From IMG/VR virus record IMGVR_UViG_3300021963_000023, positions 62,001-126,000 of that record: 64,000 nucleotides of DNA. One strand, written 5' to 3'. This document shows, piece by piece, positions 26,882 to 64,000 of the stretch. How positions within the stretch are numbered: the first letter of the stretch is position 1; every line of letters begins with the position of its first letter. The notes beneath the pieces are model-generated. The model was not told where the DNA came from. It saw nothing but the letters and a program-made list of their open reading frames with translations, and searched no databases. Position numbers and translations under genes: made by a program.

Positions 26882-27580
26882 TTATTCTAAAAATCCACCT
26901 AAAACACCGTCATATAAAAGTTTATATCTTTTAAGGGATATTCTAATTTCTTTTGTTGATAATGATGTCATCTCTCTTAGAGACAGGAGGATTAAATTCT
27001 TATTGAACTTATTGCCATCACCTATTTGAAATATTTGGTCAAAATTGCTAAATATTTCTAAGAGGGCATAGCCTAGTTTTTTCTCATTATCCGTTAGATC
27101 TTCTTTTTCAATAAAATCTTCCAATTTGTTGGTTAGATTGATTATAACATTGGTATAATCTATATGATACTCATCAATTGTATATGAAAACTCAACCCTG
27201 CTTTCAATATCTTCAGATATGTCCTCATATGAAATACTCCTATTTTGCTCCTTGGTATCTTTTTGGATTGCCCCCATTAAGTAGTTCTTACAAATGGTTC
27301 CAAAATAGGAATAGGCTTTGTGGTTTTTTGTGTGATCAAACTTGTTGATCTTAGTTATTAAAAAAGACATGGTATCAGTATGAATCTCTTCAAATTCCAT
27401 GTCTTTTCTGTATAGTTTATAACGTCGAATAATTGATTCGACCATTATAATTAGGGGTTCACGTAAATATTCGTTGAATATCTTATTCCTTTCCGCATCG
27501 TCAGTACTTTCTAAGTATTTAACTACTGCCTTTTCTTGATCCTCCCCAAAATAAACTTTTTGGGTTCTTTTTCTTGGCAT
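26882..27580 (-). CDS. phage sigma factor, T4 gp55-like (late transcription)
   Basis: Region-2-like KINKFDHTKNHKAYSYFGTICKNYL resembles gp55 FD....N.F.YFT. Confidence 0.65.
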   Translation of the reverse strand: MPRKRTQKVYFGEDQEKAVVKYLESTDDAERNKIFNEYLREPLIIMVESIIRRYKLYRKDMEFEEIHTDTMSFLITKINKFDHTKNHKAYSYFGTICKNYLMGAIQKDTKEQNRSISYEDISEDIESRVEFSYTIDEYHIDYTNVIINLTNKLEDFIEKEDLTDNEKKLGYALLEIFSNFDQIFQIGDGNKFNKNLILLSLREMTSLSTKEIRISLKRYKLLYDGVLGGFLE

Positions 27581-28365
27581 TAAATTGCATTATAATTGAC
27601 TTCTCGTTTATTGGTAAAGAAAAATTCTTTTTTAGCTGTTTCTACCCAAAATTTAGCTTCGTTTTCTACAAGTTTAGTTTTCTCATCATTTTTATATGAC
27701 CAGAATAAAGAATCTTCTCTTAGATTAACGTGTCTGTATCCTATTCTAGGTACAACCATAACCTTGGCACCATTATGTGTAAGTCTTAATAAAAATTCAT
27801 AACCAAAGGTTAATTTGATATTTTCTTTAAGACCACCATTTTCTTTAACTACTTTTGTTTTGTATAACCCGCCACTAATTTGATAGCTTTGATATTCAAT
27901 TAAAACTTCATTATCAATAAATCCTTGTTTTTCTGAAAAACCATATGCCCAAACAGATTCATTTGTGAAGTTTGTAAAATTACCCTCTTCGTCGATATCC
28001 TTAACAATTGGTAAAAAAACATCAACACCTGGATTTTCGTTAACATATTGATTAACTGACTTTAACCATATTTTTTGATATTCATCATCAATCTCTAAAA
28101 TTGAGAACCACTCAGTATCGCAACTATTAATACCTTCATTTACTTGCGTGCAGAAGTCAGTATTATTATTGTGAAGTTTATATTCAATTTCTAATTTTTT
28201 ACCTAAATCAACAGCATCTAATTTGGTTTTCAAACTTGCTGGTGCAACAATCATTAGTTTAACATCGTTGTAAAATTCTTTAGCAGATTCTACAGCTTTT
28301 TGTAACATTAAATTATAATCGTCGTTTAATTTATGTACCGGTAATATTATTGTTATATTTTTCAT
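27580..28365 (-). CDS. glycosyltransferase, GT-A fold (GT2-like)
   Basis: ITIILPVH, NEGI, ILEIDDEY (DxD-like), EFLLRL, GYRH. Confidence 0.78.
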   Translation of the reverse strand: MKNITIILPVHKLNDDYNLMLQKAVESAKEFYNDVKLMIVAPASLKTKLDAVDLGKKLEIEYKLHNNNTDFCTQVNEGINSCDTEWFSILEIDDEYQKIWLKSVNQYVNENPGVDVFLPIVKDIDEEGNFTNFTNESVWAYGFSEKQGFIDNEVLIEYQSYQISGGLYKTKVVKENGGLKENIKLTFGYEFLLRLTHNGAKVMVVPRIGYRHVNLREDSLFWSYKNDEKTKLVENEAKFWVETAKKEFFFTNKREVNYNAI

Positions 28366-29432
28366 ATAGCTTCTTCTTCTTTTTTTAATTTTTCTAATCC
28401 TTTTAAAATCGTATCTTTTCTTTTAGAATTGAATGATTCAAAAATGTTAATGGTGTTATTTTTAGTGATATCTTTATTATATGGTAATAATGTATCTTGC
28501 ATTTTTTGTTTTACCTCTTCATTAATTTCAACACCCTCTAACCAAGCTAAAGAGTATGTTCCTAATAATTCAATAAGTTTACTTTCATCATATGTCCACA
28601 TACCATTCTCAGATAACCAATCAGGTTCACTCATTGGTATTTTACCAATAATTGGTACACCAGACTTCATTGACTCTAACGGGAAGGTTCCAAATGTACT
28701 ATCGTCATCTAACCATAATGAAACAAAACATTCTTTTAATCCTTCAGCAAATTCCACATTTGACATTTGAACCATGTCTCTAAATGTGATCCATCTTAAT
28801 TGTGGATACTTTAAATAAAATTCAGAAATTAACTTTCTATGTTTAACCCTATCTCTACAGCTAATGGCAATAAATGGTTTTGCTGGCGATGTTGGAACAT
28901 TAAAGTGATCTTCAATAACCGGTGGAATGATAAAAACTAAAGATTCTGGAAAATATTCTAGAATGTATTTTTTAGCCGATTCAGTTGTTGTAATGACTTT
29001 ATCAAAACCAAAATCGCTAAATCTGCTACCAATTGATAATGTATCGAACATGTATTCTTTTTGTTGAATTAACATAATTTTAGTACATCTAACATTTGCT
29101 AATTGTTGTAACACATTCGCGTAGCTCTCTGGAACAACAAGAATATCGTCAATACTCATTTCTACTTTATCTTCTTTAATTGATACCACTGGTATTTCAT
29201 TATAAGAATCTCCTAGCCATGCTGAAACCCCACTATACTTAGAATCCTCAACAAGTATCTTTGAATTCATACCCGCTTGTTTTAAGTATAATGCCATATC
29301 ATAGATATGTTTAACTGATGCTCTTGGATTACCTTTAGTGTCATAACACAAAAAATAAATCGCATTTTCTTTAGATTCAATTCTGGTTAGAGCGTCTTCT
29401 AATTTTTCGATGTTTTTTAATTTTTCACTCAT
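28362..29432 (-). CDS. glycosyltransferase, GT-B fold (GT4-like)
   Basis: STFGTFPLESMKSGVPIIG motif; DILVVPE. Confidence 0.75.
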   Translation of the reverse strand: MSEKLKNIEKLEDALTRIESKENAIYFLCYDTKGNPRASVKHIYDMALYLKQAGMNSKILVEDSKYSGVSAWLGDSYNEIPVVSIKEDKVEMSIDDILVVPESYANVLQQLANVRCTKIMLIQQKEYMFDTLSIGSRFSDFGFDKVITTTESAKKYILEYFPESLVFIIPPVIEDHFNVPTSPAKPFIAISCRDRVKHRKLISEFYLKYPQLRWITFRDMVQMSNVEFAEGLKECFVSLWLDDDSTFGTFPLESMKSGVPIIGKIPMSEPDWLSENGMWTYDESKLIELLGTYSLAWLEGVEINEEVKQKMQDTLLPYNKDITKNNTINIFESFNSKRKDTILKGLEKLKKEEEAI

Positions 29433-30389: not shown

Positions 30390-31118
30390 TTACTCGTATC
30401 TGTTTAATATTTCACCAATGATTGGATTTCTAACAATATCCTGATGTCCAAATTCAAAAATTCCTATTCCTTTAACGCCATCTAATCTTTTCTTGGCATC
30501 ATATAATCCGGATTTGGTTTTATCTTTATATTTGTCAGATTGTTCTAAATCACCAGATAGGAAAAACTTGGAGTTGAATCCAATTCTGGTTAATAATAAT
30601 TTAATTTGAGATGGTGTTGCATTTTGTGCTTCTTCAAAAACTAATATTGTATTATCAACATTCCATCCTCTCATGTATGCTAATGCTGCAACCTCAATAT
30701 ACCCCTCATCTTTTAATTGTTCTCTAGCTTCTTTACCTATAATTTTATTTAATAAGTAATATGAAGGATAAATGTACGGATCTAATTTTTCTTCTAATCC
30801 ACCAGGTAAAGAACCAAGTTTTTCTTCAGCCTCAACAGCTGGCCTAACTATGATTATTTTTTCAAATTTATTATCATCATCATGCAATAAATCTACCGCT
30901 CTTTTCATAGCTATGTATGATTTACCAACCCCTGCGGGGCCAAAACATAGTGTTATTTGGTTTTCACCTAATATATCCCAGTATATTTCTTGATTTTTTG
31001 TTAGAAATTTTTCCTTTGGTTTTTTGATAATCTCTCTAATTCTCTGCTTATGTGGTATTTTCTTTTCCTCTACCGCAACTAGTGGGTAGTTTCTTCCTGT
31101 TTTAGGTTTTAATGCCAA
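30390..31118 (-). CDS. phoH: PhoH-family ATPase
   Basis: GPAGVGKS, RPAVEAEEKLGSLPG, YMRG, EEAQN, GDLEQSD, DIVRNP. Confidence 0.93.
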   Translation of the reverse strand: MALKPKTGRNYPLVAVEEKKIPHKQRIREIIKKPKEKFLTKNQEIYWDILGENQITLCFGPAGVGKSYIAMKRAVDLLHDDDNKFEKIIIVRPAVEAEEKLGSLPGGLEEKLDPYIYPSYYLLNKIIGKEAREQLKDEGYIEVAALAYMRGWNVDNTILVFEEAQNATPSQIKLLLTRIGFNSKFFLSGDLEQSDKYKDKTKSGLYDAKKRLDGVKGIGIFEFGHQDIVRNPIIGEILNRYE

Positions 31119-31157
31119 AGTATGTAGTTTTTAATAATTCTTTATTACCTATAAATA

Positions 31158-31775
31158 TCACTTAATTCCACTAGAATTAAAACCACCTTCCCCTCTTAAA
31201 GTTTCATTAATCTCTTCTGTTTTTGCTAAAATAACCTTACCCTCACCAAATACAGGCATAATTACCGCTTGAGCGATCCTATCTCCCTTTTGTATGGTAA
31301 ATGGTTCTTCCCCAAGATTAATTAACGGAACCTTAATTTCACCCCTATAATGGCTATCGACAGTTCCTGGGCTATTTAAAACAGTAATACCATTTTTAAT
31401 GGCTAAACCACTTCTTGGTCTAACCTGTATTTCGGTACCTTTTTCTAATTGAAAATAGAGACCAGTTGGGATTAAAACTCGTTTTAATGGATTTAATGTG
31501 ATTGTTTCAGAAATGTCCGCTCTAAGATCAAATCCACTATCCCCTTCGTATGCGAACTTTGGATCATCATTAGTTGATTTGTTTATATACTTAACTGAAA
31601 GTTTTGAATATTCTTCTTTTTGTGCATTATAAACCTCATTATTCAACTCATCTAATGTTAAATTAATTTGTTGTGCTAATGTTTCATCAATTGTATCATC
31701 ATCTTCATCTGTAGATAACAATTTTTCATACTCCTTTAATTTTTCTAGGATTTCCTGAAAATTACCTTGTTCCAT
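31158..31775 (-). CDS. dut: dUTPase (trimeric) with acidic N-terminal extension
   Basis: SGFDL, RPRSGLA, GTVDSHYRGEI, GDRIAQ, RGEGGFNSSG. Confidence 0.95.
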   Translation of the reverse strand: MEQGNFQEILEKLKEYEKLLSTDEDDDTIDETLAQQINLTLDELNNEVYNAQKEEYSKLSVKYINKSTNDDPKFAYEGDSGFDLRADISETITLNPLKRVLIPTGLYFQLEKGTEIQVRPRSGLAIKNGITVLNSPGTVDSHYRGEIKVPLINLGEEPFTIQKGDRIAQAVIMPVFGEGKVILAKTEEINETLRGEGGFNSSGIK

Positions 31776-32092: not shown

Positions 32093-33322
32093 TTATTTAT
32101 TAACAATAGACTTGAAAAACTCAACCCTATCTTCACACACCTTTTTTAAAGAATATTTAACCTTAACCGTTTCATACAACCTATTTCCTAGGTCTTCAAC
32201 TAAAGCGGGGTTATCTACTAATCTTTTCATATGTTTAGCCCAATCTTTATGGTTTTTTCTTGGCGAAACTAATAGGGCATTGCCTTTGTCATTAAACACG
32301 CCACTATCAACAGCCGATACTAAATCTATGGTATATGGATTAGTTTCACTAGCAATAATGGCCTTTTTATGGAACCCAGCTTCAATGACTTTTAATTGAG
32401 ATTTACATGAGTTGAAAAATGATTCAACAAGAGGTGCTAATGACACATCAAAATAATTATAGTTCATAGCATATTTGCTAACCTCTTGTGTCCATCTTCT
32501 AACATATGGTACGTCCATTGATGAATAATCGGTTTCTTTAAATGACGTTAAATGATTTTTATACTCATCATTTAAAACTTTATAAGATTTTGTAAAAATG
32601 CTTTCGTATTTACACCACACAGTTTCATGTGGCATAATTGGCCTTTGTCTTTGCTGACCAGTAGATTTATCGATTTCTGTAACAGTACCTCTTAGATCAA
32701 AACCACACAAAACAAATTGTGTTTTATCTAAATATAAATTTTGTATACTTTCAATTCCTGATTGTAATAATTCAATATCATGTAAATGAGATGATCCACC
32801 CAACCAACCAAATCTTAATCTATCTGATTTAATTGGGTTTGATTTAAACTGTGGTTCATTTTCATCAACCGCATTAGGAAAAATAAATACGTTCTTTGTT
32901 AGCCCTAATCTTTTTTTAATTTCATCAGCAAAAAATGGCGTTGTGCATGTTACATAGTCCACTAGTTTTAATAGTTCTATCTTTTTTTCACCTACTTTTG
33001 CAACTCTAATTTGTTCATATAGTGGGTGTCTTTGATCTACAGTCCAGAAATCATCAATATCCATTATTGTTTTTATTCCTTTGGCTTTCAACCACTTAAC
33101 TCTTTCTACATTTCTTTCGTGATTAACTTGGTGAATGAAGCTATGAAAAACAACAATATCATAGTTGTTAAAAACCTCATCACGATCCTCTAAATTCATG
33201 GTGATATCCACATGAATTTCATCATTGAAATTATTACCAATATACTTAAATGGATCTAATACTCTGTATTTACCAACCCCATGAGCATCTGAAGGAATAG
33301 CTAAAATTCTTAATTTTGACAT
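32093..33322 (-). CDS. glycosyltransferase, GT-B fold
   Basis: GVGKYRV, MDIDDFW, GWLGGSSHLHD, LAPL...FNSCKSQLKVIEAG. Confidence 0.85.
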   Translation of the reverse strand: MSKLRILAIPSDAHGVGKYRVLDPFKYIGNNFNDEIHVDITMNLEDRDEVFNNYDIVVFHSFIHQVNHERNVERVKWLKAKGIKTIMDIDDFWTVDQRHPLYEQIRVAKVGEKKIELLKLVDYVTCTTPFFADEIKKRLGLTKNVFIFPNAVDENEPQFKSNPIKSDRLRFGWLGGSSHLHDIELLQSGIESIQNLYLDKTQFVLCGFDLRGTVTEIDKSTGQQRQRPIMPHETVWCKYESIFTKSYKVLNDEYKNHLTSFKETDYSSMDVPYVRRWTQEVSKYAMNYNYFDVSLAPLVESFFNSCKSQLKVIEAGFHKKAIIASETNPYTIDLVSAVDSGVFNDKGNALLVSPRKNHKDWAKHMKRLVDNPALVEDLGNRLYETVKVKYSLKKVCEDRVEFFKSIVNK

Positions 33323-36904: not shown

Positions 36905-36955
36905 GGAATCTTTTTTATATAAATATCAAACGCTATGAAAGATATTTATCTAAAT

Positions 36956-50410: not shown

Positions 50411-50435
50411 TATTACTTTTAAAATAGATTTATTT

Positions 50436-50468: not shown

Positions 50469-50484
50469 CGTTCCATGTGGAACC
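50469..50484. promoter_or_regulatory. parS-like palindrome
   Basis: cGTTCCAtGTGGAACc, 13/16 match to TGTTCCACGTGGAACA, intergenic. Confidence 0.5.
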
Positions 50485-50549
50485 TTTTTCATTACCAATT
50501 GATTTTCTAATAAATTATACTTATATTAAAAGAAACAAATTAATTTAAT

Positions 50550-51290
50550 ATGGATAATATAAACCCAATGGTTGCATATGATGTGGTATCCTTACCATCT
50601 CAAGGTGTACACTATTCCAACGGAAAGAAAACATTAAGAGTAGCTTATCTAACGGCTGCAGATGAAAATATTCTAATGTCCCCCAATTTAATACAATCCG
50701 AAACGGTTGTTGATGAATTATTAAAAAGAAAAATATTGGATAAAGACCTTAGTTATGAGGATCTTGTTGAGGAAGATAAACAAGCTATTTTAATATTTTT
50801 AAGAAATACAGCATTTGGTACAGAATATACATTAACATTAACCGATCCAGCAACTAAGAAATCTTTTGAGGGAATACTAGATTTATCTGTATTAAAGGTT
50901 AAAGATTTTAAATTAGTTGCTGATTCAAATGGCGAATATTCATACATATTACCAATGTCTAAGAAAAATATAACATTTAACTTCTTAACAAACACACAAG
51001 AAAAAGAATTACAGAACATTAAAGAATCAAGTGGATCATCGGTTTCTCCAGTTAATACTAAAAAACTTGAGATGATGATTAAATCTATTGATGGTCAACG
51101 AGATCAAATGGCAATATATCAATTTATTCAAAATCTACCAATCAAAGATTCACAAGATTTTAAAAAATTCGTATCAGAAAATAAACCAGGTTTAGACCTA
51201 ATAGTTGATGTAATCGCCCCGTCAGGAGAAAAAGTCCCAGTTTTGGTTGACTTTGGGGTGGAGTTTTTTCGTCCCTTCTACGGAATATAA
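50550..51290 (+). CDS. tail assembly chaperone / baseplate hub assembly protein (gp26-like)
   Basis: VSLPSQG.HY, LTAADENIL, D..AILIFLR, ends FFRP; between tube and tape measure. Confidence 0.75.
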   Translation: MDNINPMVAYDVVSLPSQGVHYSNGKKTLRVAYLTAADENILMSPNLIQSETVVDELLKRKILDKDLSYEDLVEEDKQAILIFLRNTAFGTEYTLTLTDPATKKSFEGILDLSVLKVKDFKLVADSNGEYSYILPMSKKNITFNFLTNTQEKELQNIKESSGSSVSPVNTKKLEMMIKSIDGQRDQMAIYQFIQNLPIKDSQDFKKFVSENKPGLDLIVDVIAPSGEKVPVLVDFGVEFFRPFYGI

Positions 51291-51414
51291 GAAAAACCAA
51301 ATACAGATTATTTTATTTCTTTTAACAAAGGGATTTACTTATCAAGACATATTAATATTACCAATACACGAAAGAAGTAATATCATTGGCGCTTTATTAG
51401 AAAATAACGGATAA
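51271..51414 (+). CDS. C-terminal extension of tail chaperone, reached by probable frameshift
   Basis: ATG-less +1 frame VPSTEYKKNQIQIILFLLTKGFTYQDILILPIHERSNIIGALLENNG after TTTTTTCGT. Confidence 0.65.
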   Translation, partial: VPSTEYKKNQIQIILFLLTKGFTYQDILILPIHERSNIIGALLENNG

Positions 51415-51429
51415 AACTATTTATATAAT

Positions 51430-53376: not shown

Positions 53377-53415
53377 TAAAACAATTAATTATCTATTTAT
53401 TAGATAAAAGAATAG

Positions 53416-56400: not shown

Positions 56401-58191
56401 AAAGAAACACAAATACCAGCTAAACCTGGTACCGTTATTCCAGGTAAAACAGAATATGGTTCAGGAAAAACTGAGATTAAAAAAACCGAAATTAAAACAA
56501 ACAGAAAACCACCATTGGATGTTGTTAAGAAATTAATAATGAAGACATTGTCTGAGTGTTTTTATTTTAAAAAATTAGAAGAAACTGACCCAGTTGTTTT
56601 CAATTCACTTAAACAGAAATTTAGATATTTTCACCCAGCGTTTCACTCAATGACACCAGAAGGATTAAATGCTAGATTAACATTCTTACAGCAATGTATA
56701 AGACCTGGTGATACAATACCAATTAAAGGATTAAGTGTTGATAGTGATTCAAATATTGTTGATGCCAGAAATACAACATTTGGACCTCCACCTGTTTGTG
56801 TTTTAAGAATCGGCGATTTTTATCATTCAAAAATAGTAATTACAAATCTTAATATAACATTTGAAAATTCAACTTGGGATTTAAACCCTGAAGGTATTGG
56901 TGTACAACCAATGATTGCTGATGTTACATTACAAATAAATTTTATTGGTGGTCAAGGTATTAAAGAACCAGTTGCAAAATTACAAAATGCATTAAGTTCT
57001 AACTTCTATGCAAATACAGAAATTTATGACTATAGAGCGGATTCAACCGTAAATAAAGATGATTTAAAAAACTTTAATATTGATTTCTTAGAAAAATTAG
57101 TAGGTAAAGTTAAAACACCAGATATAGCCGGTATTGATACATCACAAAATCCTAAGAAAGAGGGAAAATATATTGGTACCTTAACAACAACACAAATGAG
57201 TTACCAGCAAAATAGAGATGATTTATTAGCTGCAACAAATGAGTATTTTGATAAATTTAAAGACACATATAATAAATTATTAAAAACTTATGGTAATGAA
57301 ATTCTACCGTTATTTATATCACCAACATATAGAACAACAAATCAATTAGATGTTCAGAATACTATTAGTACAACAACTCAGATAACATTATTAGGTAACT
57401 ATAAGAAGACAAGAGATTTTACAAATCTATATGGTAGATTAGAAACAAAACTTTTAGAAAAAGTTTCAGCATCTGACCATAATATTGTATTAGACTTTGA
57501 TATGGATTTGGGTTCAACAAAATACGAGAGATCTAGAGCTATTATTGATCCTTATATTAAAAACACAGTAACCGAATTTTTAAACAGTATCAAGGATGAA
57601 CAAATGATAAAAGAACTTGAGACTAATAGAAATAAATTTATTGAGTTTATTGATGGGTTTAATTTTATCATGGAAACTAATGGTAAAGACGCTAGAATAG
57701 ATAAAGAAACAACAACGGTTGTTAGCTTAACGGATTTTAACGTTCAAAAATTATATGAGCAATATGATGAAGTGGTAAACCTTGTAAAAGACAAGCATTC
57801 AATGTTTACTGCTGAGTTAAATACATCAATTGACTTTGCTGATCCATCATTTACAGACGATCTTTACAAACAACTATTGGCGTTTATAATTAAAAATAAC
57901 GTTGATAAAATTTTAAAAGAATACGAGAATTCACCAGATAATAAATTATTTGATAAAAATGCTATTAACAAAATAGAAAGAAGATTAAATAAGTTTATTA
58001 AAAAAGCATTAGACATTGACGAGAAGAAATTTAAATATAAAAAGGTACAGAATAAAAAAGAATTTAAACCATACGCGGTTACAATTACTGGATCAATAAC
58101 AGGCCCACAACAAGAAAAATTGAACAACGTACATGGTTTAAAAGATAATTCAACAGAATCAAAGTTAAACTTTTCTAAAGTTATTAAATAA
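53416..58191 (+). CDS. large baseplate hub/tube-initiator protein with inserted OmpA-like domain
   Basis: Tube-like motifs LGRPEPIYTYQNTERS and PPVCVLRIGD; YNIKLSYRRSDSIV OmpA-C-like motif. Confidence 0.6.
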   Translation: MPSYLDFDATKRFRDELLSKTLNAPNGPQTFSSSNYPIQKTNSFPNKDQGDVILNQQTSRDAQIISTGTSNRFAPENGDYVVVEDVRNITSIDNVGIYPYFPINSGILGRGLIGALDSKNYEFESKLAKFANYHISESPDGPVQARIRQNLQTATLGRVRALDALNGNLSTAINLVTGKEKLIERNYKITVAKTLPGKLIDFVQTVAGVEFPFSEIPGDYLTNPANPVINRPVPQSEFGKIFQDATGVLGSLLGIQRRPKASRKPSDLMLEYLSDGQKGVLYDNLSFSTYAPNYTTTARSQNSSKLFNFVDKIAAGINKVIGREAPAGKAYIGDDRGNDVKNVIADFNDNKTRSPYYLSLMFDETATKLFHSERNISERGPIPGKLTWYSPNSKNKLGVHNLEYQSESSVFEETLSTKYAFRDDSILGKTQELLNSLPKDGGLSRSHVANVIDQTSRIFREGDTLLSRGSAIKYIDKATGKQDGTEYCRVWTKDRSYMNYSDTMKRTGLIRKVEDSVLSTPWNLNIAPMSNGNGSFDKSSTNIDAVAGKVKKYMFSLENLSWKTSNKFGYTYNDLPYCERGPNGGRVMWFPPYDLKVNETNSASWDKNNFLGRPEPIYTYQNTERSGTVSFKVIVDHPSILNLLIKEISDEQAEEYLNSVFAGCQDIDFYTLVRKYTTLDRSDLELIQAYLEYYRDGKTVDISDSLEFINIAGESTVTPETTTGGSEASSVLGTATNYTGFLFFPNDYPKPQNDIYSNQDYGQIYSGYTTADKKALFNTTLNTELTKILTVNTPNNKSDVKTIYGSETPTETTSALVTRTQGQITSAFQKLEGNYTSLTDTLNAIKAELVKNSLKSIEIDLESSTSFVADEKYNIKLSYRRSDSIVKHIIKTLSKNNDIPSTLSKYWKKTISELDSNPGEVKDSKTLNLKDLGYGDDVNGDIIINFTNKGENATRSGPEGYDCHKQEIKNTGGLKEYAPVTFYCRSVEVKINAYPKETQIPAKPGTVIPGKTEYGSGKTEIKKTEIKTNRKPPLDVVKKLIMKTLSECFYFKKLEETDPVVFNSLKQKFRYFHPAFHSMTPEGLNARLTFLQQCIRPGDTIPIKGLSVDSDSNIVDARNTTFGPPPVCVLRIGDFYHSKIVITNLNITFENSTWDLNPEGIGVQPMIADVTLQINFIGGQGIKEPVAKLQNALSSNFYANTEIYDYRADSTVNKDDLKNFNIDFLEKLVGKVKTPDIAGIDTSQNPKKEGKYIGTLTTTQMSYQQNRDDLLAATNEYFDKFKDTYNKLLKTYGNEILPLFISPTYRTTNQLDVQNTISTTTQITLLGNYKKTRDFTNLYGRLETKLLEKVSASDHNIVLDFDMDLGSTKYERSRAIIDPYIKNTVTEFLNSIKDEQMIKELETNRNKFIEFIDGFNFIMETNGKDARIDKETTTVVSLTDFNVQKLYEQYDEVVNLVKDKHSMFTAELNTSIDFADPSFTDDLYKQLLAFIIKNNVDKILKEYENSPDNKLFDKNAINKIERRLNKFIKKALDIDEKKFKYKKVQNKKEFKPYAVTITGSITGPQQEKLNNVHGLKDNSTESKLNFSKVIK

Positions 58192-58511
58192 TGAATCAAT
58201 ATTTTAACAGATATGAGTATTTCCTAGAGGATGGTGAATTTAAAATTGTACCAGGAATTGAAATACCACCTAAATCAACTGACAAGTACGTAAAGTATAT
58301 AAAGGGTAAAGATAGGTTGGATAAGATGTCTCAAGAGTATTATAGCACCCCACTTTTTGGTTGGTTAATTCTACTATCCAACCCTAAGGTAGGTTCAATT
58401 GAGTTTGAAATACCTGATAATTCAATTATTAGAATACCATTTCCACTTATTAATTCTTTACAAGAATACAAAAAGAACGTAGAATTGTATAAACTATATT
58501 ATGGGGAATAA
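58191..58511 (+). CDS. LysM-like baseplate wedge protein (gp53/gpX-like)
   Basis: DRLDKMSQEYY..P..GWLIL..NP...IRIP. Confidence 0.7.
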   Translation: MNQYFNRYEYFLEDGEFKIVPGIEIPPKSTDKYVKYIKGKDRLDKMSQEYYSTPLFGWLILLSNPKVGSIEFEIPDNSIIRIPFPLINSLQEYKKNVELYKLYYGE

Positions 58512-61500
58512 CAAATTAAATCAAAATGAAAACATACTAGTAGTAGTCGATCAGCAAAACATTGTACATATCGATCCTAATACTGTTATAGATCAAGATG
58601 GTCAACTACAAAGTAGATTGGTTGATCATGAGAATCTAGTAATGTATGTTAACCTAGAAGCTGATTTGGTACCCAGAAGTGTTTTTTACTCGGATTCAGA
58701 AAAAAGCACATTAACATCATTAGCATCAGGTAGATTTAACATGATGCGAAATCAAGGAGATAAGAATGAGTTTGAAAATAACTTTGATACCAATTGGACA
58801 GAGACATTTGTACCAGAAGCAATACTAAGTACTAATGTTAATGAACCAAAAACTTATGACCCTACAGCACAAACATTTGGTATAGAAAGTATTAATATAG
58901 TTGTTAAAGGAGCAAATAGCATACCACAAGTATCAATTAATTTTATTGATGTTAGAGGTAAAACATTATTTGATTCACCTAAAAACTCACCATATAAAGC
59001 GTTTTTTCATCAACCCTGGCCAATATTTTATCTAACTGTTAAAGGGTATTATGGTAAAGCCATTAGATATAGAATCCAACTCGTAGATTTTAAAACCAAA
59101 TTTAATGGTAATACTGGTAACTTTGAGATATCAACAAAATTTGTTGGGTCAACGTATGCTTTTTTAAATGATATTTTACTTCAAAATATTGTTAATGCAC
59201 CATACATGTATATGGTAGAATCTAGCGAACCATATAAAACTAATCCAAAGACTGGATTCATCGAAAAGAAAATATCAAAAACAACAAAGGGATTTTCAAT
59301 TTTAAAATCAGTTTATTCTGATTATAAAGCTAAGGGATATATTCCTAAAGACTTTCCGGTAAAAACGCTTAGAGAACTTTTAATGACCGCAACGGGATTA
59401 GAAAGTATTATTGAAAACGCACTTTTTAGTGAAACTGTTAGTCCTAATGTTTTAAGTGATGTTTCAGAATTTGATAAGATTCTAGGGAATCTAGAGAAAA
59501 CAGTTATTTCATGGAGCAATAGATTTTTAAATTCTACCGATATTGTTAAAGAAGATGGGGACGTAATTTATTACGCTTTAAATAAAGCCACAAATGATAG
59601 AACACAAACATCAAGTGGACCTATTAGCGGCGATATAATAAGTGGTACAACCAACAACTTATCACTTAAAAGTAGAATAGACAAATATATTATTGATTTA
59701 GAAAACAATTCTGCGTTTGGTAAAAAAATAGAAAACAAACAGAAAATTAAAACTAAAACAATATCATTAGATTCAATAAGAAATATTGGTGATTTTTTTG
59801 TTTTTAATAATGGTAAGTACGGCGTTGCAAACGAAAAACTAGTTGAAAGAATTAAAAAAATTCAAAACGAATTTATTACCAGTAGAGATTCAGTTGAAAC
59901 AGATGTTGAAAAAGCAATAAATGAAGTTGTTAAAGATAATAAAAAAGGTGGTTTTGGATTTGAACCAACCATTAGGAATATATTTGCTGTTATTTTAGCA
60001 AATGCTGACACATATGTTCGTTTAATGAAAGATGTTCATAGAAAAGCGATACAAAGATCTGATTTTAGAAAAAAAGAAATTGTGGGGATTAGTGATAATA
60101 AAGATGAAGTGATATATCCTTGGCCCGAAGTTAGAAAGAAAGGGAATAAAGAGCAATATGCATTTTATTATCCAGCAGATAGTCAAGTTGTTGAATCAAC
60201 AAAAGGTAAAAACTTTTCACTATGGCCTGAGGTTGAATTTGTAGAAACATATAATAGTGTTGCAACAAAAAGAGTGGATAGTGAAAGTGGTAAAGAAATT
60301 TTTCCATCTGACCTTATGTTTGTTTTTGATGGTAAAGATGAGTTAAGAGAAATTAAAAATGTAAGTACATTCTTTAAAACAGAAGATAAATACCCATATA
60401 CAGACAAATCAATAGCTTCAATTTTATATGAAATTTCTGAAAGGGCACAATATATAACATCATATAATAATTTTTCAGCAGAAAATGGATTAAATGAAAT
60501 TTGTGCAAATGAATTTGAAACGCTAAGTAGCGCGATAGATGGTGATATTGATATTAGGGAGGTTTTAAATCAACTAATTACAAGTCAACAGACACTAATC
60601 GACTATATGTCAAAATATTCAAAAAACGAAAGGTATCCATATTTTCAAGATAGACTACCAACAGTTGATTACATAAAAGAACTTGTAGATAGGGATTTTA
60701 ATATTATTGAATATAATGATGTTAAAACAACGGATGTTACAGATAAAGAATTACCAAGATTGCAGGCTTATATCGACAACTATGTTATTGATCCATACCG
60801 ATTAAAAGAATTTCCATTTAATTCTGATCTATATCAATCATATATTGGCAATAAGGTATTAGCAGAAAACGATTATAAATATTATAACATTTTTAAGGTA
60901 AATCAGGATGATAATTTTATCAGTTCACCAATTAATTCAAAATCTTGGGTTCTAAGTGCATACACTGAAAATATTTTTAATCAAAAAATAACACTTAGTG
61001 GACAAACAAGAAATTTACTTAACACACCATATTTTCATAAACAACTTTATAACGATTTTTTCAAAGGCGGCGTTTCAGAAAGATATGTTGGTTCGGCTTA
61101 TCTATTATTAAATTCATTACCATATAAAGATTTAGATGATATTATTGAATTTAATGAAAGTAAAATATTAATGTCATCTTTATTTAAAGAGGTTGCGGCC
61201 GCTCACTACGTTCCATATTATTTAATGTTAAAATGGGGATCAATTTATCATAGATATAAAAAGTATCTTAAAGAAAACGTTGACATATTAAGTGGTGTTA
61301 CTGTTTCTATAAATGGTTCTACCTTTTTTGATAACGGAACAAACGTATCTTTCAATCTTAGTGGGTTAACACCATCAATGAGTGCTGTAACGTATTCATC
61401 CAATTCATATGTTGGAGTTTACCCATACTATCATGGTATATTTCATCAAGTAGTTAATGGCTATAGTTTTTATAATCCATCTGGGTTTACAAAAACAAGT

Positions 61501-64000
61501 GCAACCGCCGTTAATGCTAGTGCGTTATACAATAATGCGATTACAAGTGGAATCACAAAATATATTTTAGAAAAACCAACCACAAAAAGTGGGTTCACAT
61601 TAACATCACTAGTTGATAACTCTAAATTTGAGACGACAGATGTTAGATATACAATTTTACCGTCTAATGGGGCATCTAAAATTGATAATATTGTTGATGA
61701 TTTCTCAAATTTATTACAAGATTCATTTAGAATAATATTAGATGATAGTGACCTAACTAAACATCCATTTTATAACGTTTTAAGTTTTCCGGCTTACAAT
61801 CAAATTATTAAAACAACTAATAATGAATTTTCATTAACTGGAGATAAGAAAAAAGTTATGGATCTTATTGCCACGTTTAGCCCTAAGATGTTAGATGAGT
61901 TTGAATCTATGTTTTTAGAATTTTCATCATTAGATTTAGATATTGATGCACCAAGGAAAAGTTCACACGACTATACTTCTTTCCAAGAAATATTGAAAGA
62001 AATATGTAGCATTGACAAAACAGGTATTGATTTCACAGTAGATGGAAATAGAGAAAAAATAATTAAAGCTCAAAATACTAAATTGGAGGCTTTAACTAAA
62101 AATATGTTAGATAATAAAAATCTAAGAAAATTAGTTATTGGTAACCCAAAACAAATTGATGATTATATCATAAATGGATTTGTTGGTAAATCTAAATCAT
62201 ATTTACCAAATCCATATAACGCGGGACAATTAACAACAGGTGTAACAGGAACAAATAAATTTATTGATTTATACATTGGACAACCTATTGAATTTTCAAC
62301 ATATACCGGTGTAACAGCAAACAGATACAATAACATATATGCTGACTTTTTTAGAGTTAATAATATTGAAATAACGGAAGAGAATATCTACTCACATAGA
62401 GAGCTTGCTAGAATATATGCTGGTTGGGTTAAAGATAATAAAGCAACCAATAATACTTTTATACCTACCAACGCATTATTTAAAACATATATAAAAACTG
62501 AAATATTTGATCCACAGGATTCTAGAATTTCATTTTTTTTACAAAACCTTATAAAAAAGTTTAAAGATTTAGGTAAGGAAAAAAATAAAGAGAAAATAAC
62601 ATTATACCATGGATATAACGAAGCTAAAACAACGAAATTAGATTTATATCAATATTTTAAATCGTTTAACGATAAGTGGATTGCTGGTAATGCGATTGGA
62701 CAAAGACATTTAATGGATGAGTTTTTATTCTTAGATAGGGCTAATAGAGATATTGGTGATAAAGCATATGTAAGTTTAGAAAGAATTATTTCTCTAGGTA
62801 GTGAGAAAAATGCAAAAATAGATTTATACAGTGCAATATCAACTTTGATACAGGGCACAAATTTTGATATGAGACCATTACCGGCTTACATTAATTTTTA
62901 TGGTACCAATACTAGTAATAAAAAAAGAATTATACCATCTAAAAACTTAGCTAGAAATTTATTCGGAACATTTTTAGATGTTGACTATCAGGACTCATCA
63001 CCTAAAATCATATTACAATATATTAATAAGACATCTCAATACTTGGATATGTCTATAGTTAATAAGGACTATAAATTTAAGAGTGACAGTTTTGATATTA
63101 AGGATACAAATAATAATCCATTAATTGTTGAACCAAGAATATTCATGGAAACAGATACTGCTAATTCAAATAGGGTTGTATCTTTTGAAGTTAATTTTGG
63201 TGATCAAGCTCAGGGTGTTTTTAAAAGTATATCATTAGATCAAAGCACATATAAAAACACAACAGAAAGTGCCCTTGCTCAAGAAAGATTGGCAAGATCA
63301 CAAGGTGGTGGTGGATCACATTCCGTGGACATAGGATTATTTGACATTTATAAAACAGCATCATATCAATGTAGTGTTACTTGTATGGGTAATGTAATGT
63401 TACAACCAACAATGTATTTCTATTTAGCAAATGTTCCAATGTTTAATGGGACCTATTTAATATTTGATGTTAGTCACTCAATAAAAGCTGGACAATTTGA
63501 AACATCATTTACTGGTGTTAGAATTTCAAACAGCACGTTACCATCTCTTGATAGTACGTTTATGTCTAGTTATAGACCATTATTTAGTAGACTACTATCA
63601 TCTGCGGTTAAGAAGAAACAACAAAGTATTCAAAATCCCACAACAGAAAAAACAATTACAACCAAGGATAAACAAACTATTAGTATTGATCCAGGTTTCC
63701 CAGTTGGTGGCGAAGATCTAAATAAAATAATTATAAACCAATCTGGGTTGTTATATGATATTATACCATATAATGGTGCAAAAGTCGGTGGTGCAAATGA
63801 AAAGTATATTCAATACATTGAGCCTAAAAAGGGTGAATTCTGGCTTAGAACAAGGGTGGCATTATTTGGTGGTTCAAAATATGACCCAACAGGTGAATTA
63901 CAATTAATTAGTGGATGGAATGCTTATCCAAATGTTCTTAAAACATATAATGATATTAAAGACACCCTTTTTGATTATTATTCAGTAAGATTACAAATCA
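58501..64000 (+). CDS. very large baseplate/tail protein, partial (over 1830 aa, no stop in window)
   Basis: ATG 58501 MGNNKLNQNENIL...; frame open at every point checked; late segment C.VTCMGNVMLQPTMYFYL...GTYLIFDVSHSI resembles hub (gp27/gpD-like) C-termini. Confidence 0.75.
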   Translation, partial: MGNNKLNQNENILVVVDQQNIVHIDPNTVIDQDGQLQSRLVDHENLVMYVNLEADLVPRSVFYSDSEKSTLTSLASGRFNMMRNQGDKNEFENNFDTNWTETFVPEAILSTNVNEPKTYDPTAQTFGIESINIVVKGANSIPQVSINFIDVRGKTLFDSPKNSPYKAFFHQPWPIFYLTVKGYYGKAIRYRIQLVDFKTKFNGNTGNFEISTKFVGSTYAFLNDILLQNIVNAPYMYMVESSEPYKTNPKTGFIEKKISKTTKGFSILKSVYSDYKAKGYIPKDFPVKTLRELLMTATGLESIIENALFSETVSPNVLSDVSEFDKILGNLEKTVISWSNRFLNSTDIVKEDGDVIYYALNKATNDRTQTSSGPISGDIISGTTNNLSLKSRIDKYIIDLENNSAFGKKIENKQKIKTKTISLDSIRNIGDFFVFNNGKYGVANEKLVERIKKIQNEFITSRDSVETDVEKAINEVVKDNKKGGFGFEPTIRNIFAVILANADTYVRLMKDVHRKAIQRSDFRKKEIVGISDNKDEVIYPWPEVRKKGNKEQYAFYYPADSQVVESTKGKNFSLWPEVEFVETYNSVATKRVDSESGKEIFPSDLMFVFDGKDELREIKNVSTFFKTEDKYPYTDKSIASILYEISERAQYITSYNNFSAENGLNEICANEFETLSSAIDGDIDIREVLNQLITSQQTLIDYMSKYSKNERYPYFQDRLPTVDYIKELVDRDFNIIEYNDVKTTDVTDKELPRLQAYIDNYVIDPYRLKEFPFNSDLYQSYIGNKVLAENDYKYYNIFKVNQDDNFISSPINSKSWVLSAYTENIFNQKITLSGQTRNLLNTPYFHKQLYNDFFKGGVSERYVGSAYLLLNSLPYKDLDDIIEFNESKILMSSLFKEVAAAHYVPYYLMLKWGSIYHRYKKYLKENVDILSGVTVSINGSTFFDNGTNVSFNLSGLTPSMSAVTYSSNSYVGVYPYYHGIFHQVVNGYSFYNPSGFTKTSATAVNASALYNNAITSGITKYILEKPTTKSGFTLTSLVDNSKFETTDVRYTILPSNGASKIDNIVDDFSNLLQDSFRIILDDSDLTKHPFYNVLSFPAYNQIIKTTNNEFSLTGDKKKVMDLIATFSPKMLDEFESMFLEFSSLDLDIDAPRKSSHDYTSFQEILKEICSIDKTGIDFTVDGNREKIIKAQNTKLEALTKNMLDNKNLRKLVIGNPKQIDDYIINGFVGKSKSYLPNPYNAGQLTTGVTGTNKFIDLYIGQPIEFSTYTGVTANRYNNIYADFFRVNNIEITEENIYSHRELARIYAGWVKDNKATNNTFIPTNALFKTYIKTEIFDPQDSRISFFLQNLIKKFKDLGKEKNKEKITLYHGYNEAKTTKLDLYQYFKSFNDKWIAGNAIGQRHLMDEFLFLDRANRDIGDKAYVSLERIISLGSEKNAKIDLYSAISTLIQGTNFDMRPLPAYINFYGTNTSNKKRIIPSKNLARNLFGTFLDVDYQDSSPKIILQYINKTSQYLDMSIVNKDYKFKSDSFDIKDTNNNPLIVEPRIFMETDTANSNRVVSFEVNFGDQAQGVFKSISLDQSTYKNTTESALAQERLARSQGGGGSHSVDIGLFDIYKTASYQCSVTCMGNVMLQPTMYFYLANVPMFNGTYLIFDVSHSIKAGQFETSFTGVRISNSTLPSLDSTFMSSYRPLFSRLLSSAVKKKQQSIQNPTTEKTITTKDKQTISIDPGFPVGGEDLNKIIINQSGLLYDIIPYNGAKVGGANEKYIQYIEPKKGEFWLRTRVALFGGSKYDPTGELQLISGWNAYPNVLKTYNDIKDTLFDYYSVRLQI

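What the first reader, a model, noticed from the sequence alone, without database searches (positions are those of the whole stretch)
27580..64000. Candidate virion glycosylation system: three glycosyltransferases plus an [S/T]-G-x-T motif enriched in structural proteins
Seen, counted by hand: about 9 [ST]GxT in the sheath (SGST, TGAT, SGKT, SGLT, SGST, TGAT, TGAT, TGTT, SGHT), clustered in its insertion regions; at least 9 in the 58501 protein (SGTT, SGQT, SGVT, SGLT, SGFT, SGIT, SGFT, TGVT, TGVT); 4 in the 36956 protein; 3 in the capsid; 2 in the 21533 protein. I noticed 2 in the 968 aa polymerase and none in ClpC or the helicase. One GT-A and two GT-B genes lie next to the late sigma gene. 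Inference: the motif may be a sequon for phage-encoded O-glycosylation of exposed virion loops.
Basis: inference. Interest (0 to 1): 0.72.

Follow-up and report, generated by a model that had tools for sequence, protein, structure and literature searches.

The report
Tail-protein [S/T]GxT motif, glycosyltransferase-rich phage
A freshwater jumbo phage carries a four-residue motif (Ser/Thr-Gly-x-Thr) about eight times more often than chance on its tail proteins and encodes many sugar-adding enzymes, so its tail may be sugar-coated at defined sites, but no sugar has yet been shown.

Summary
The window lies in a 251-kb T4-like jumbo phage. [ST]G.T occurs 182 times against about 92-98 expected genome-wide. 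All of the excess sits in the tail module: 106 against 27 (z=15). Twelve virion proteins hold 90 against 11.7.

The motif is sharply defined: hydrophobic residue, then S or T, G, x, T. Ser at position 4, Asp/Asn at position 1 and the reversed motif are not enriched. Composition, local composition, repeats, paralogy and DNA words do not explain it.

Relatives keep the motif density (sheaths have a median of 8 against 1.45 expected) while individual sites turn over; only 28% sit at the same place in a 52%-identical relative.

The three glycosyltransferases are real, soluble, and present in every relative whose contig covers the locus. The genome holds at least four more glycosyltransferases and a sugar epimerase. 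No route to a DNA hydroxyl handle was found.

A distant 735-kb phage that shares one of the transferases shows the same motif, seven-fold enriched. Most of the ten other phages tested show no clear enrichment.

The sequon reading is therefore plausible (about 0.4) but unproven. A lineage-typical beta-turn motif is the main rival (about 0.3). Structure models were too poor to map the sites. Mass spectrometry is needed to decide.

The parts
27580..28365 (-). GT-A fold glycosyltransferase (GT2-like, 261 aa, DxD 'DID' at residue 123, no membrane segment)
   Evidence: Pfam Glycos_transf_2 1.4e-7, above cut-off. Found again in the whole-genome scan. 65-75% identical copies at the same place in relatives G002 and G003. 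Maximum 19-residue hydropathy 0.90.
28362..29432 (-). GT-B fold glycosyltransferase (356 aa, GT4-like)
   Evidence: No Pfam hit. The only PDB sequence hit is 8xsg AmGGT, 4e-7. AmGGT is a homologue of Agt, which lengthens glucose chains on glycosylated adhesins (PMC12159676). Atlas neighbours are viral clusters with Glycos_transf_1. Present in all 9 relatives' contigs that cover the syntenic place.
32093..33322 (-). Second GT-B glycosyltransferase (409 aa, 'GT-B2'); the only transferase shared with megaphage LR756501
   Evidence: phrog_7162 8e-42, with weak Pfam GT1/GT4 matches. Homologues at 33% in LR756501 and 27% in Phapecoctavirus. 65-70% identical in G002 and G003. More than 7,000 metagenome relatives, with generic names only.
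26882..27580 (-). Candidate phage sigma factor (weak)
   Evidence: Sigma70_r2 E=0.0012, below cut-off. NCBIfam sigma-70 family 2e-4 to 6e-4, below cut-off.
30390..31775 (-). PhoH-like ATPase (30390-31118) and dUTPase (31158-31775) lying between the transferase genes. PhoH has a TATTTATA promoter-like box 39 nt upstream.
   Evidence: Pfam PhoH 8e-63 and dUTPase 6e-26. Promoter-like box.
46793..49630 (+). Tail sheath (945 aa). Nine motif sites, seven of them in a lineage-specific insertion (about residues 100-310) and none in the conserved C-terminal core (660-945).
   Evidence: Pfam Phage_sheath_1 and 1C; phrog_23. Counts. 79 homologues have a median of 8 sites against 1.45 expected. The insertion is absent from the T4, Mel-JY01, LR756508 and immuto sheaths.
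58501..64000 (+). Large tail-module protein (1915 aa, ends at window coordinate 64248). Nine sites against about 1.1 expected.
   Evidence: The orthologue in G003 (43% identical) has 6 against 1.2. No Pfam or PHROG family.
36935..38407 (+). Unknown 490-aa protein with 4 sites against 0.55 expected. It shares the word TG.TKSQL..G.T with the 191-aa protein at genome 158230.
17581..19314 (+). Gp23-type major capsid protein. Three sites against 0.55-0.6 expected (weak; shuffle P about 0.03).
   Evidence: Pfam Gp23 1.4e-73. Counts. The head module as a whole has 3 against 1.7, not significant.
21533..22906 (-). Unknown 457-aa protein. Two sites against 0.4 expected (not significant).
49922..58191 (+). 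Tail tube gp19 (49922-50410), T4 baseplate protein (50550-51290), a 648-aa protein and a 1591-aa protein. No motif excess (0, 0, 1 and 2 sites); these serve as internal controls.
   Evidence: Pfam. Counts.
38897..44708 (.). Non-virion controls: family-B DNA polymerase (3 sites against 0.3 expected) and SNF2 helicase (0 sites).
   Evidence: Pfam. Counts.

Best explanation
Hydrophobic-[S/T]-G-x-T is a short linear motif that selection keeps at high density in the outward-facing, fast-evolving parts of this lineage's tail proteins: the sheath insertion domain, baseplate-distal proteins and fibre proteins. The most likely use is as an acceptor site for O-glycosylation in the host cytoplasm, before or during tail assembly.

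The enzymes would be the phage's own soluble glycosyltransferases. One enzyme, not identified, would put the first sugar on a Ser or Thr hydroxyl in an exposed turn. Others would lengthen it; candidates are the Agt-like GT-B and the two beta4GalT-like enzymes fused to a lectin-like domain. Activated sugars would come from the host and from a phage NDP-sugar epimerase/dehydratase. The result would be a sugar coat on the tail.

Shown: the motif, its sharpness, its restriction to tail proteins, its turnover with kept density, the conserved set of soluble transferases, and the lack of a route to DNA glycosylation.

Inferred: that the transferases act on these proteins and that the motif is what they read.
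For: 1. Size and place. The tail module has 106 against 27.3 (z=15). Every other part of the genome has O/E 0.6-1.2. Twelve virion proteins have 90 against 11.7; the other 252 proteins have 92 against 80.

2. Sharpness. At position 1, S is 44/5.4 and T is 46/6.0, while D, N, A and G are near expectation. At position 4, T is 90/11.4 but S is 11/10.1 and V/I are not enriched. The reversed motif occurs 13 times against 82 for the forward one. Position -1 is hydrophobic in 72% of sites against 35% background.

3. Not ancestry and not DNA. The motif-rich proteins share no blastp similarity and have no internal repeats. Codon use at Gly and at Thr4 matches the background.

4. Density is kept while sites move. 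79 sheaths have 4-12 sites against 1.45 expected, spread over 38 alignment columns, only one of which is shared by at least 80% of sequences. In the 380-aa family, counts are 5-13 against 1.06 expected, over 27 columns. Between G000 and G003 orthologues (52% identical), 22 of 80 sites stay in place, 36 new ones appear, and per-position conservation (0.50, 0.51, 0.20, 0.49) is no higher than average.

5. The fold does not require it. Sheaths of T4, Mel-JY01, LR756508 and immuto have 0-3 sites. At aligned places they read INAAN or ITAGN where this sheath reads ISGHT.

6. Enzymes. The three transferases are conserved in 9 of 9 relatives whose contig covers the locus, at 65-94% identity. None has a membrane segment. 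The nearest solved relative of the 356-aa GT-B belongs to the family that lengthens glucose on glycosylated adhesins. Two GT7 proteins have beta4GalT7 as best PDB hit (1e-28) and are fused to a ConA-like domain. Further GT2-type genes and an NDP-sugar epimerase are present.

7. No DNA handle. There is no TET or C5-methyltransferase in five lineage records. The only ThyA-family gene is a canonical thymidylate synthase with the dUMP-specifying Asn.

8. A second, independent case. Megaphage LR756501 has the closest outside homologue of GT-B2 and at least 10 GT2 hits. In 14 of its proteins the motif occurs 154 times against 21.3 expected, with the same position-1 and Gly specificity (Ser at position 4 is also mildly raised, 43/16.1). 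These proteins are unrelated to the ones here. Most of the ten phages with 0-4 transferases show no clear excess.
Against: - No glycan has been observed, and transferase function cannot be read from the fold.
- Multi-transferase phages are usually explained by DNA or host-envelope modification (PMC12801897, PMC12619734).
- Phapecoctavirus has a GT-B2 homologue and four transferases but O/E 1.06.
- Cellulophaga phi38:1, with no detectable transferase, has 16 sites against about 3.5 in four tail proteins.
- T4 fibre proteins gp36 and gp37 show about a three-fold excess without known glycosylation.
- In homologues Gly is replaced mainly by Asp, Asn or Ala, and position -1 is hydrophobic, as in a plain tight turn after a strand.
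- Known bacterial and phage O-glycosylation seldom uses so strict a sequon.
- The one proven phage case decorates the C-termini of capsid and tail tube (cited in PMC12619734). Here the tube has no sites and the capsid is not clearly enriched.
- The motif is not avoided in non-virion proteins (the PolB has 3).
Confidence: 0.4

Rival explanations
1. Structural turn motif. Hydrophobic-[S/T]-G-x-T is simply the preferred way, in this lineage and some other Bacteroidota phages, to end one beta-strand and start the next: a tight turn with Gly at the positive-phi position, a capping Ser/Thr and a beta-branched Thr. Thr-rich tail domains evolve quickly by inserting and deleting hairpins. The glycosyltransferases do something unrelated, such as modifying the host envelope or an unknown substrate.
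For: - Position -1 is hydrophobic in 72% of sites, and S/T is enriched at +5 and +8, as in an alternating strand.
- Many sites are spaced 5-30 residues apart.
- Gly is replaced by Asp, Asn or Ala in homologues.
- In the few moderately confident parts of the models, sites fall at strand ends or in the loop after them.
- There is a mild excess in T4 gp36/gp37 and in phi38:1 tail proteins without a matching transferase set.
- Phapecoctavirus has the GT-B2 homologue but no motif excess.
Against: - Individual sites are no better conserved than average residues and turn over quickly, while the density stays 5-10 times expectation.
- Ser at position 4, Val/Ile at position 4 and Asp/Asn at position 1 are not enriched, although they would serve a turn or a strand nearly as well.
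- The beta-rich SprB/cadherin and adhesin-like paralogues of the same genome show no excess (O/E 1.2).
- Homologous sheaths do without the motif.
- Two unrelated sets of proteins in two distant transferase-rich phages share the core but differ in flanking context: position -1 is hydrophobic in 0.72 against 0.52 of sites.
Confidence: 0.3
2. The motif is read by something other than a glycosyltransferase. It could be a different modification of Ser/Thr or neighbouring residues, for instance by the six tandem N-terminal-twitch radical-SAM paralogues encoded next to four transferase genes. It could also be a docking site for an assembly chaperone or a decoration protein.
For: - The signature is that of a selected short linear motif.
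- The genome carries an unusual block of six radical-SAM paralogues (NF033640, 358-377 bits) directly after a GT2/GT7/GT7/GT2 block, plus one more radical-SAM gene.
- A ClpB/C-type chaperone is encoded in the window.
Against: Nothing links these enzymes to proteins, and no precedent is known to me for this motif. Whether the radical-SAM block co-occurs with the motif in LR756501 or in relatives was not tested.
Confidence: 0.12
3. The transferases glycosylate the phage DNA, as T4 alpha- and beta-glucosyltransferases and the 5mYOX- or ThyS-linked transferases do, and the motif has nothing to do with them.
For: - The three genes sit among nucleotide-metabolism genes (PhoH, dUTPase).
- Core-gene status fits an anti-restriction role.
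- The paper on the 'moraphage' lineage, which this phage resembles, names DNA glucosylation as the usual role (PMC12619734).
Against: - DNA-sugar pathways are normally clustered with a ThyA-like hydroxymethylase or with a C5-methyltransferase plus TET (bioRxiv 10.1101/2023.12.21.572611).
- None was found in G000 or four relatives. The TET search had no positive control and is weak.
- The single ThyA-family gene, in G001, is a canonical thymidylate synthase (1e-78 to bacterial enzymes) with the dUMP-specifying Asn kept in 'PFNIASY'.
- No PDB sequence hit to the T4 transferases.
- The genome is only about 75% complete, so absence is not proven.
Confidence: 0.1
4. Artefact: the excess comes from S/T/G-rich composition, locally biased segments, cryptic repeats, or post-hoc choice of motif.
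For:
- Tail proteins are rich in S, T and G.
- Other S/T/G words (TGS, SGS, VSG, PT repeats) are also over-represented genome-wide.
Against: - Local block shuffles give 94-98 against 182 observed.
- In an unbiased scan of all 8000 a-b-x-c words, SG.T ranks 4th and TG.T 12th.
- Permuted motifs give 8-47 against 82.
- There are no repeats or paralogy.
- A tail set defined in advance gives z=15.
- The result is replicated in relatives and in LR756501.
Confidence: 0.01

Closest known systems
Mycobacteriophage virion glycosylation (Freeman et al. 2023, Cell Host Microbe 31:1216; known to me through its citation in PMC12619734 and PMC11256854, the paper itself is not held)
   Same: Phage-encoded glycosyltransferases would modify the phage's own structural proteins in the host cytoplasm, giving a sugar-coated virion.
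   Different: There, glycans sit on the C-termini of the capsid and tail-tube subunits. Here the candidate sites are internal, follow a strict four-residue word, and lie in the sheath insertion, baseplate and fibre proteins. The tube has none and the capsid is not clearly enriched. The host is probably a Gram-negative Bacteroidota. Nothing is experimentally shown here.
Cytoplasmic NGT/Agt adhesin glycosylation of Actinobacillus and Haemophilus (N-x-S/T sequon; Agt/AmGGT lengthens glucose; PMC12159676)
   Same: Soluble cytoplasmic transferases read a short sequon on large beta-rich surface proteins. The window's 356-aa GT-B has AmGGT as its only solved sequence relative (4e-7).
   Different: N-x-[ST] is not enriched here (108 against 117). 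No NGT (GT41) was looked for or seen. The linkage would be to oxygen rather than nitrogen.
Proteoglycan linker synthesis (xylose on the Ser of Ser-Gly sites, then beta4GalT7)
   Same: The acceptor is a hydroxy-amino acid followed by Gly. The phage has two GT7 proteins whose best solved match is beta4GalT7 (1e-28).
   Different: This is a resemblance only. The match to beta4GalT1 is nearly as good (6e-25). No xylosyltransferase is known here. The acidic flanks of the animal site are absent, and Thr at +3 is not part of that site.
Phage DNA glucosylation and sugar hypermodification (T4 alpha/beta-GT; 5mYOX- or ThyS-linked transferases, bioRxiv 10.1101/2023.12.21.572611)
   Same: Several GT-A and GT-B genes in a large virulent phage, placed among nucleotide-metabolism genes and conserved as core genes.
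   Different: No hydroxymethylase, TET or C5-methyltransferase partner was found.
'Moraphages', large freshwater Bacteroidota phages (Arch Virol 2025, PMC12619734)
   Same: The gene set matches. Core genes include four glycosyltransferase groups, dUTPase, a sigma factor, a ClpA-type ATPase, and T4-like sheath, tube, portal and capsid. The window also carries SprB-repeat proteins pointing to Bacteroidota.
   Different: Membership was not tested by phylogeny. That paper leaves the role of the transferases open and does not describe the motif.

Membership tests
Phage virion glycosylation (mycobacteriophage type) | Phage-encoded glycosyltransferases present and conserved | tested here: met
   Three in the window and at least four more in the genome. 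The trio is present in 9 of 9 relatives whose contig covers the locus.
Phage virion glycosylation (mycobacteriophage type) | Glycans demonstrated on virion proteins | not testable with these tools
   Needs mass spectrometry or glycan staining of virions; no isolate exists.
Phage virion glycosylation (mycobacteriophage type) | Acceptor region at the C-termini of capsid and tail-tube subunits | tested here: not met
   The tube (49922-50410) has 0 sites. The capsid sites are internal (residues 174, 305, 411). Sites cluster in the sheath insertion and in baseplate and fibre proteins.
DNA sugar hypermodification pathway | ThyA-like pyrimidine hydroxymethylase or hydroxylase (cytosine-specific Asp variant) | tested here: not met
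   No PF00303 hit in G000, G002, G003 or G004. The hit in G001 is a canonical thymidylate synthase with Asn retained. The genomes are fragments, so absence is not proven.
DNA sugar hypermodification pathway | C5-cytosine methyltransferase plus TET/5mYOX next to the transferases | tested here: not met
   PF00145: 0 of 5 records, with a working control. PF12851: 0 of 5, but the control was silent, so that half is inconclusive.
Bacteroidota general O-glycosylation | Sequon D-[ST]-[AILVMT] on exported proteins | tested here: not met
   23 against 36.9 in the twelve virion proteins, which is a depletion. That system also works outside the cytoplasm, whereas tails assemble inside it (established knowledge).
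NGT/Agt cytoplasmic N-glycosylation | N-x-S/T sequon enriched on the substrates | tested here: not met
   108 against 116.6.
NGT/Agt cytoplasmic N-glycosylation | Agt-type GT4 elongating enzyme | tested here: inconclusive
   The only PDB hit of the 356-aa GT-B is AmGGT, at 4e-7 over residues 75-282. This is too distant to infer specificity.
Serotype-converting Gtr-type host glycan modification | Membrane-embedded transferase or flippase components | tested here: not met
   Eight of the nine transferase candidates have a maximum 19-residue hydropathy of 1.4 or less, so no membrane segment. The weak GT2 hit at 40551-41231 reaches 1.77. Flippases were not searched for.
T4-like (Gp23-capsid) myovirus, probably 'moraphage' lineage | Gp23 capsid, Gp20 portal, gp19 tube, sheath, T4-type terminase | tested here: met
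   Pfam hits.

The most novel reading that the evidence does not exclude
Abundant freshwater jumbo phages of Bacteroidota, and independently a 735-kb megaphage, run a sequon-directed cytoplasmic O-glycosylation system. A conserved set of soluble phage glycosyltransferases reads [S/T]-G-x-T in exposed turns and coats the tail sheath, baseplate and fibres with glycans. The sites turn over as in a viral glycan shield. This would be the first defined O-glycosylation sequon of a bacterial virus, and the first glycosylated contractile tail.
Probability: 0.35. Interest if true: 0.85.

Novelty: new variant of a known kind. Interest (0 to 1): 0.62.

Why it matters
Glycosylation of phage particles is known from a single group, the mycobacteriophages, where it changes how antibodies see the virion. 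If these tails are glycosylated at a readable four-residue word, three things follow:
1. Glycosylation sites could be predicted from sequence in thousands of uncultured phages. The sheath family alone has more than 590 contigs, and the GT-B2 family more than 7,000 proteins.
2. The many 'orphan' glycosyltransferases of large phages would get a testable substrate.
3. A soluble, sequon-reading O-glycosyltransferase would be a useful tool for cytoplasmic glyco-engineering.

Even if the motif proves purely structural, it is still unexplained and worth a structural answer: a short word whose density is kept at 5-15 times expectation while its positions turn over, in unrelated tail proteins of two distant phage lineages.

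Tried and rejected
- Composition: whole-protein and local (10-40 aa) shuffles do not explain the counts.
- Post-hoc motif choice: an unbiased scan of all three-residue gapped words ranks SG.T 4th and TG.T 12th. PT-linker words rank first.
- Repeats and paralogy: there are no blastp hits among the motif-rich proteins and no internal repeats.
- DNA-level word: codons at Gly and Thr4 match the background. The NNT preference at position 1 applies generally before G.
- Generic feature of phage structural proteins: T4, Mel-JY01, LR756508, Phapecoctavirus, crAss001, phi4:1 and B40-8 give O/E 0.65-1.46.
- Structure mapping: both AlphaFold jobs gave poor models (sheath pLDDT 44, 380-aa protein pLDDT 40). 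The VIA-align search recovered only the conserved sheath C-terminus (Z about 7). Exposure of the sites is therefore untested.
- Co-occurrence inside the lineage: uninformative, because every contig that covers the locus has the transferases.
- Megablast of 20 kb against cultured phages: no match.
- Sequence searches of the GT-A and GT-B2 against PDB: nothing useful.
- The large protein search for GT-B2 returned only generic names.
- NCBIfam gave no specific names for the transferases.
- Complex prediction was not used. Which of about eight transferases would start the chain is unknown, and enzyme-substrate contacts are poorly predicted.
- Late-promoter test: TATAAATA is not informative. A different box, TATTTATA, precedes 45 genes, including tail genes and PhoH at the head of the transferase run, but its timing is unknown.

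Full report
**What the window is.** The 64-kb window is bases 62001-126000 of a 251,149-bp IMG/VR virus record with about 31-32% G+C, estimated 75% complete. It is a T4-like myovirus. It has a Gp23 capsid (17581-19314), a Gp20 portal, a T4-type terminase, a gp19 tube, a T4 baseplate protein, and a 945-aa sheath at 46793-49630. It also has a family-B DNA polymerase, an SNF2 helicase and a ClpB/C-type ATPase. No cultured phage matches at the DNA level. The capsid is 29-45% identical to those of an uncultured 484-kb phage, Rhodothermus RM378, Microcystis Mel-JY01 and Flavobacterium phage immuto. A SprB-repeat/cadherin protein just downstream points to a Bacteroidota host. The gene set (four glycosyltransferase groups, dUTPase, sigma factor, ClpA, T4-like structural genes, freshwater origin) matches the recently described 'moraphages' (PMC12619734). 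I did not test membership by phylogeny.

**The observation.** Genome-wide there are 182 [ST]G.T sites. Whole-protein shuffles expect 91.6, and shuffles within blocks of 10-40 residues, which keep local composition, expect 94-98. The excess is concentrated.
- A set defined in advance (all 32 ORFs on the + strand from the sheath to genome position 163836, which even includes a ribonucleotide reductase) has 106 against 27.3 (z=15).
- The head module, the early region, all minus-strand genes, the transferase/radical-SAM island and the S/T/G-rich adhesin-like paralogues all have O/E 0.0-1.8, none significant.
- The strongest proteins lie just beyond the window: 18 against 2.05, 13 against 1.24, 11 against 0.71 and 10 against 0.99.

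**What the motif is.** In twelve virion proteins (90 sites against 11.7 expected) the specificity is sharp.
- Position 1: S 44 against 5.4 expected and T 46 against 6.0. Asp, Asn, Ala and Gly are near expectation.
- Position 2: Gly 90 against 11.4.
- Position 4: Thr 90 against 11.4, but Ser only 11 against 10.1, and Val/Ile are not enriched.
- Position -1: hydrophobic in 72% of sites against 35% background.

The reversed word T.G[ST] occurs 13 times against 82 forward in the nine top proteins, and other permutations occur 8-47 times. In an unbiased scan of all 8000 a-b-x-c words, SG.T ranks 4th and TG.T 12th, behind the words of Pro-Thr linkers. The motif-rich proteins have no blastp similarity to each other and no internal repeats. 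Codon use at Gly and Thr4 equals the background, and the NNT preference at position 1 holds for any Ser/Thr before a G-starting codon. The signal is therefore at the protein level and is not inherited from a shared domain.

**Evolution of the sites.** The lineage is very abundant: more than 590 IMG/VR contigs carry the sheath.
- 79 sheath homologues (66-96% identical) have 4-12 sites, with a median of 8 against 1.45 expected.
- In a 32-sequence alignment the sites occupy 38 different columns, and only one column is shared by at least 80% of sequences.
- In a 380-aa tail protein family (47-94% identical), counts are 5-13 against 1.06 expected, over 27 columns. New sites appear inside lineage-specific insertions.
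- Between this genome and relative G003 (orthologues on average 52% identical), only 22 of 80 sites are at the same aligned place (control triplets: 16%), and 36 sites in G003 lie where this genome has none. Conservation at the three fixed positions (0.50, 0.51, 0.49) is no higher than the average identity. Yet G003 keeps O/E 3.3 in these proteins and 2.09 genome-wide.

Selection thus seems to act on density rather than on particular sites. The sheath fold does not require the word. The sheaths of T4, Mel-JY01, LR756508 and immuto have 0-3 sites. Seven of this sheath's nine sites lie in an insertion the others lack. At two alignable places the others read INAAN or ITAGN where this one reads ISGHT.

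**The enzymes.** 27580-28365 is a GT2-type GT-A with a DxD. 28362-29432 is a GT-B whose only solved sequence relative is AmGGT. AmGGT belongs to the Agt family, which lengthens glucose chains on cytoplasmically glycosylated adhesins. 32093-33322 is a second GT-B, phrog_7162.

All three are kept at 65-94% identity, in the same order, in every one of nine relatives whose contig reaches that place. They are as well conserved as the sheath and better conserved than the fibre proteins.

Outside the window the genome adds more:
- two beta4GalT-like GT7 proteins fused to a ConA-like domain (best PDB hit beta4GalT7, 1e-28);
- two GT2_4-type paralogues;
- two weak GT2 hits;
- an NDP-sugar epimerase/dehydratase.

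None of the three window transferases or the GT7 and GT2_4 proteins has a membrane segment.

**Rival substrates.** DNA sugar modification normally needs a ThyA-like hydroxymethylase, or a C5-methyltransferase with a TET enzyme, and these usually sit beside the transferases (bioRxiv 10.1101/2023.12.21.572611). None was found in this genome or four relatives. The single ThyA-family gene, in G001 in a part missing from this contig, is a canonical thymidylate synthase. The TET search lacked a positive control and the genomes are incomplete, so this rival is weakened but not excluded. Host-envelope modification cannot be tested here.

**Co-occurrence across phages.** Strong enrichment, defined as at least 7 proteins with at least 5 sites and O/E of at least 3, was seen in three genomes:
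- this genome (7 proteins);
- its relative G003 (8 proteins);
- LR756501 (16 proteins), a 735-kb uncultured megaphage.

LR756501 holds the closest outside homologue of GT-B2 (33% identical) and at least ten GT2 genes, but shares only 18 detectable proteins with this phage. In 14 of its proteins the word occurs 154 times against 21.3 expected. Position 1 is S 70/9.2 and T 84/12.1, position 4 is T 154/21.3, and the rest of the genome is at 1.08. Some of these proteins look like tail fibres or carry a Bacteroidota secretion-tail domain.

Among ten phages with 0-4 transferases, T4, Phapecoctavirus, Mel-JY01, LR756508, crAss001, phi4:1 and B40-8 have O/E 0.65-1.46, and immuto has 1.71 (one protein passes the threshold). 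Cellulophaga phi38:1, with no transferase found, has 2.28, with 16 sites against about 3.5 in four tail proteins.

Two independent transferase-rich lineages with the motif against none of the others is suggestive. It is a small sample, and it is confounded by host phylum and genome size. Phapecoctavirus (transferase homologue, no motif) and phi38:1 (mild motif, no transferase) both cut against a simple link.

**Verdict.** A selected, lineage-typical short motif on tail proteins co-exists with a conserved set of soluble transferases that lack an evident DNA substrate. I rate O-glycosylation at these sites as the single most likely explanation (about 0.4). The alternatives are a purely structural strand-turn word (about 0.3), another modification or binding function (about 0.12), and transferases acting on DNA with an unrelated motif (about 0.1). 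Mapping the sites on structures failed because the models were poor. Only mass spectrometry or enzyme assays can decide.

Noticed in passing
outside the window: G000:C1:214181-226481 (loci L090): An island of four glycosyltransferase genes (GT2_4-like, two GT7/beta4GalT-like proteins fused to a ConA/Laminin_G_3 domain, GT2_4), followed directly by six tandem paralogous radical-SAM genes with an N-terminal twitch/SPASM domain (NF033640, 358-377 bits). One more radical-SAM gene lies at 244062-245063. GT7 enzymes and such a radical-SAM array are unusual in a phage.
   Followed up: partly
outside the window: G000:C1:249330-251128 (L091): An NDP-sugar 4,6-dehydratase/4-epimerase (Pfam Epimerase 4e-45) next to a weak GT2-like ORF at the very end of the contig. 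A DUF401 transporter-like protein lies at 247794-248801.
   Followed up: partly
whole genome; in the window e.g. upstream of 49922, 51430, 12263, 15576, 16358, 38431, 44762, and of PhoH (31118, minus strand): The octamer TATTTATA lies 12-76 nt (mostly 12-45) upstream of 45 genes, 17 times the genome-wide rate, often only 4-15 nt before the start codon. It is probably a phage promoter giving short or leaderless mRNAs. It precedes tail genes and also PhoH at the head of the PhoH-ORF-GT-B-GT-A-sigma run. T4's TATAAATA is not enriched in the same way.
   Followed up: partly
outside the window: G000:C1:147200-161698: Pro-Thr repeat linkers (TPTPTP...) occur in five consecutive tail-module proteins and give the most over-represented three-residue words in the genome (z about 19). 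Such linkers are O-glycosylated in other systems and are a second candidate target for the transferases.
   Followed up: no
outside the window: G000:C1:184113-210598 and 234783-239099: A family of large S/T/G-rich paralogues (up to 76% identical segments), several with the N-terminal word [IL]P.SGVTGLNL. Despite their composition they show no [ST]G.T excess (O/E 1.2). The neighbouring 154065-158186 protein has SprB repeats and cadherin domains.
   Followed up: partly
LR756501.1 (loci L204-L240), e.g. 252448-256500, 466198-470223, 247690-249690: The 735-kb megaphage shows the same [ST]G.T enrichment in 16 large proteins that are unrelated to those of this phage. One of them carries a T9SS Por_Secre_tail domain and a Fib_succ_major domain.
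   Followed up: partly
Cellulophaga phage phi38:1 NC_021796 44784-55558 (L253): Four adjacent large tail proteins have 3-5 [ST]G.T sites each (16 against about 3.5 expected), although no GT2 or GT1 family gene was detected in the genome. This warns that part of the signal may be structural.
   Followed up: partly
relative G001:C1:7834-8937 (L095): A canonical thymidylate synthase with a roughly 50-residue insertion. It lies in a part of the lineage's genome that is missing from this contig, which shows how much the 75%-complete record can hide.
   Followed up: yes
window 38897-41803: The family-B DNA polymerase, a non-virion protein, has 3 motif sites against 0.3-0.4 expected (shuffle P about 0.003).
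   Followed up: no
window 36935-38407 and G000:C1:158230-158805: Two otherwise unrelated proteins share the 13-residue word TG.TKSQL..G.T. More loosely, 28 of the 182 sites continue as [ST]G.T...L, which hints at a longer sub-motif.
   Followed up: no
outside the window: G000:C1:239119-242506: Three tandem paralogues of about 370 aa (60-66% identical) with no family match.
   Followed up: no
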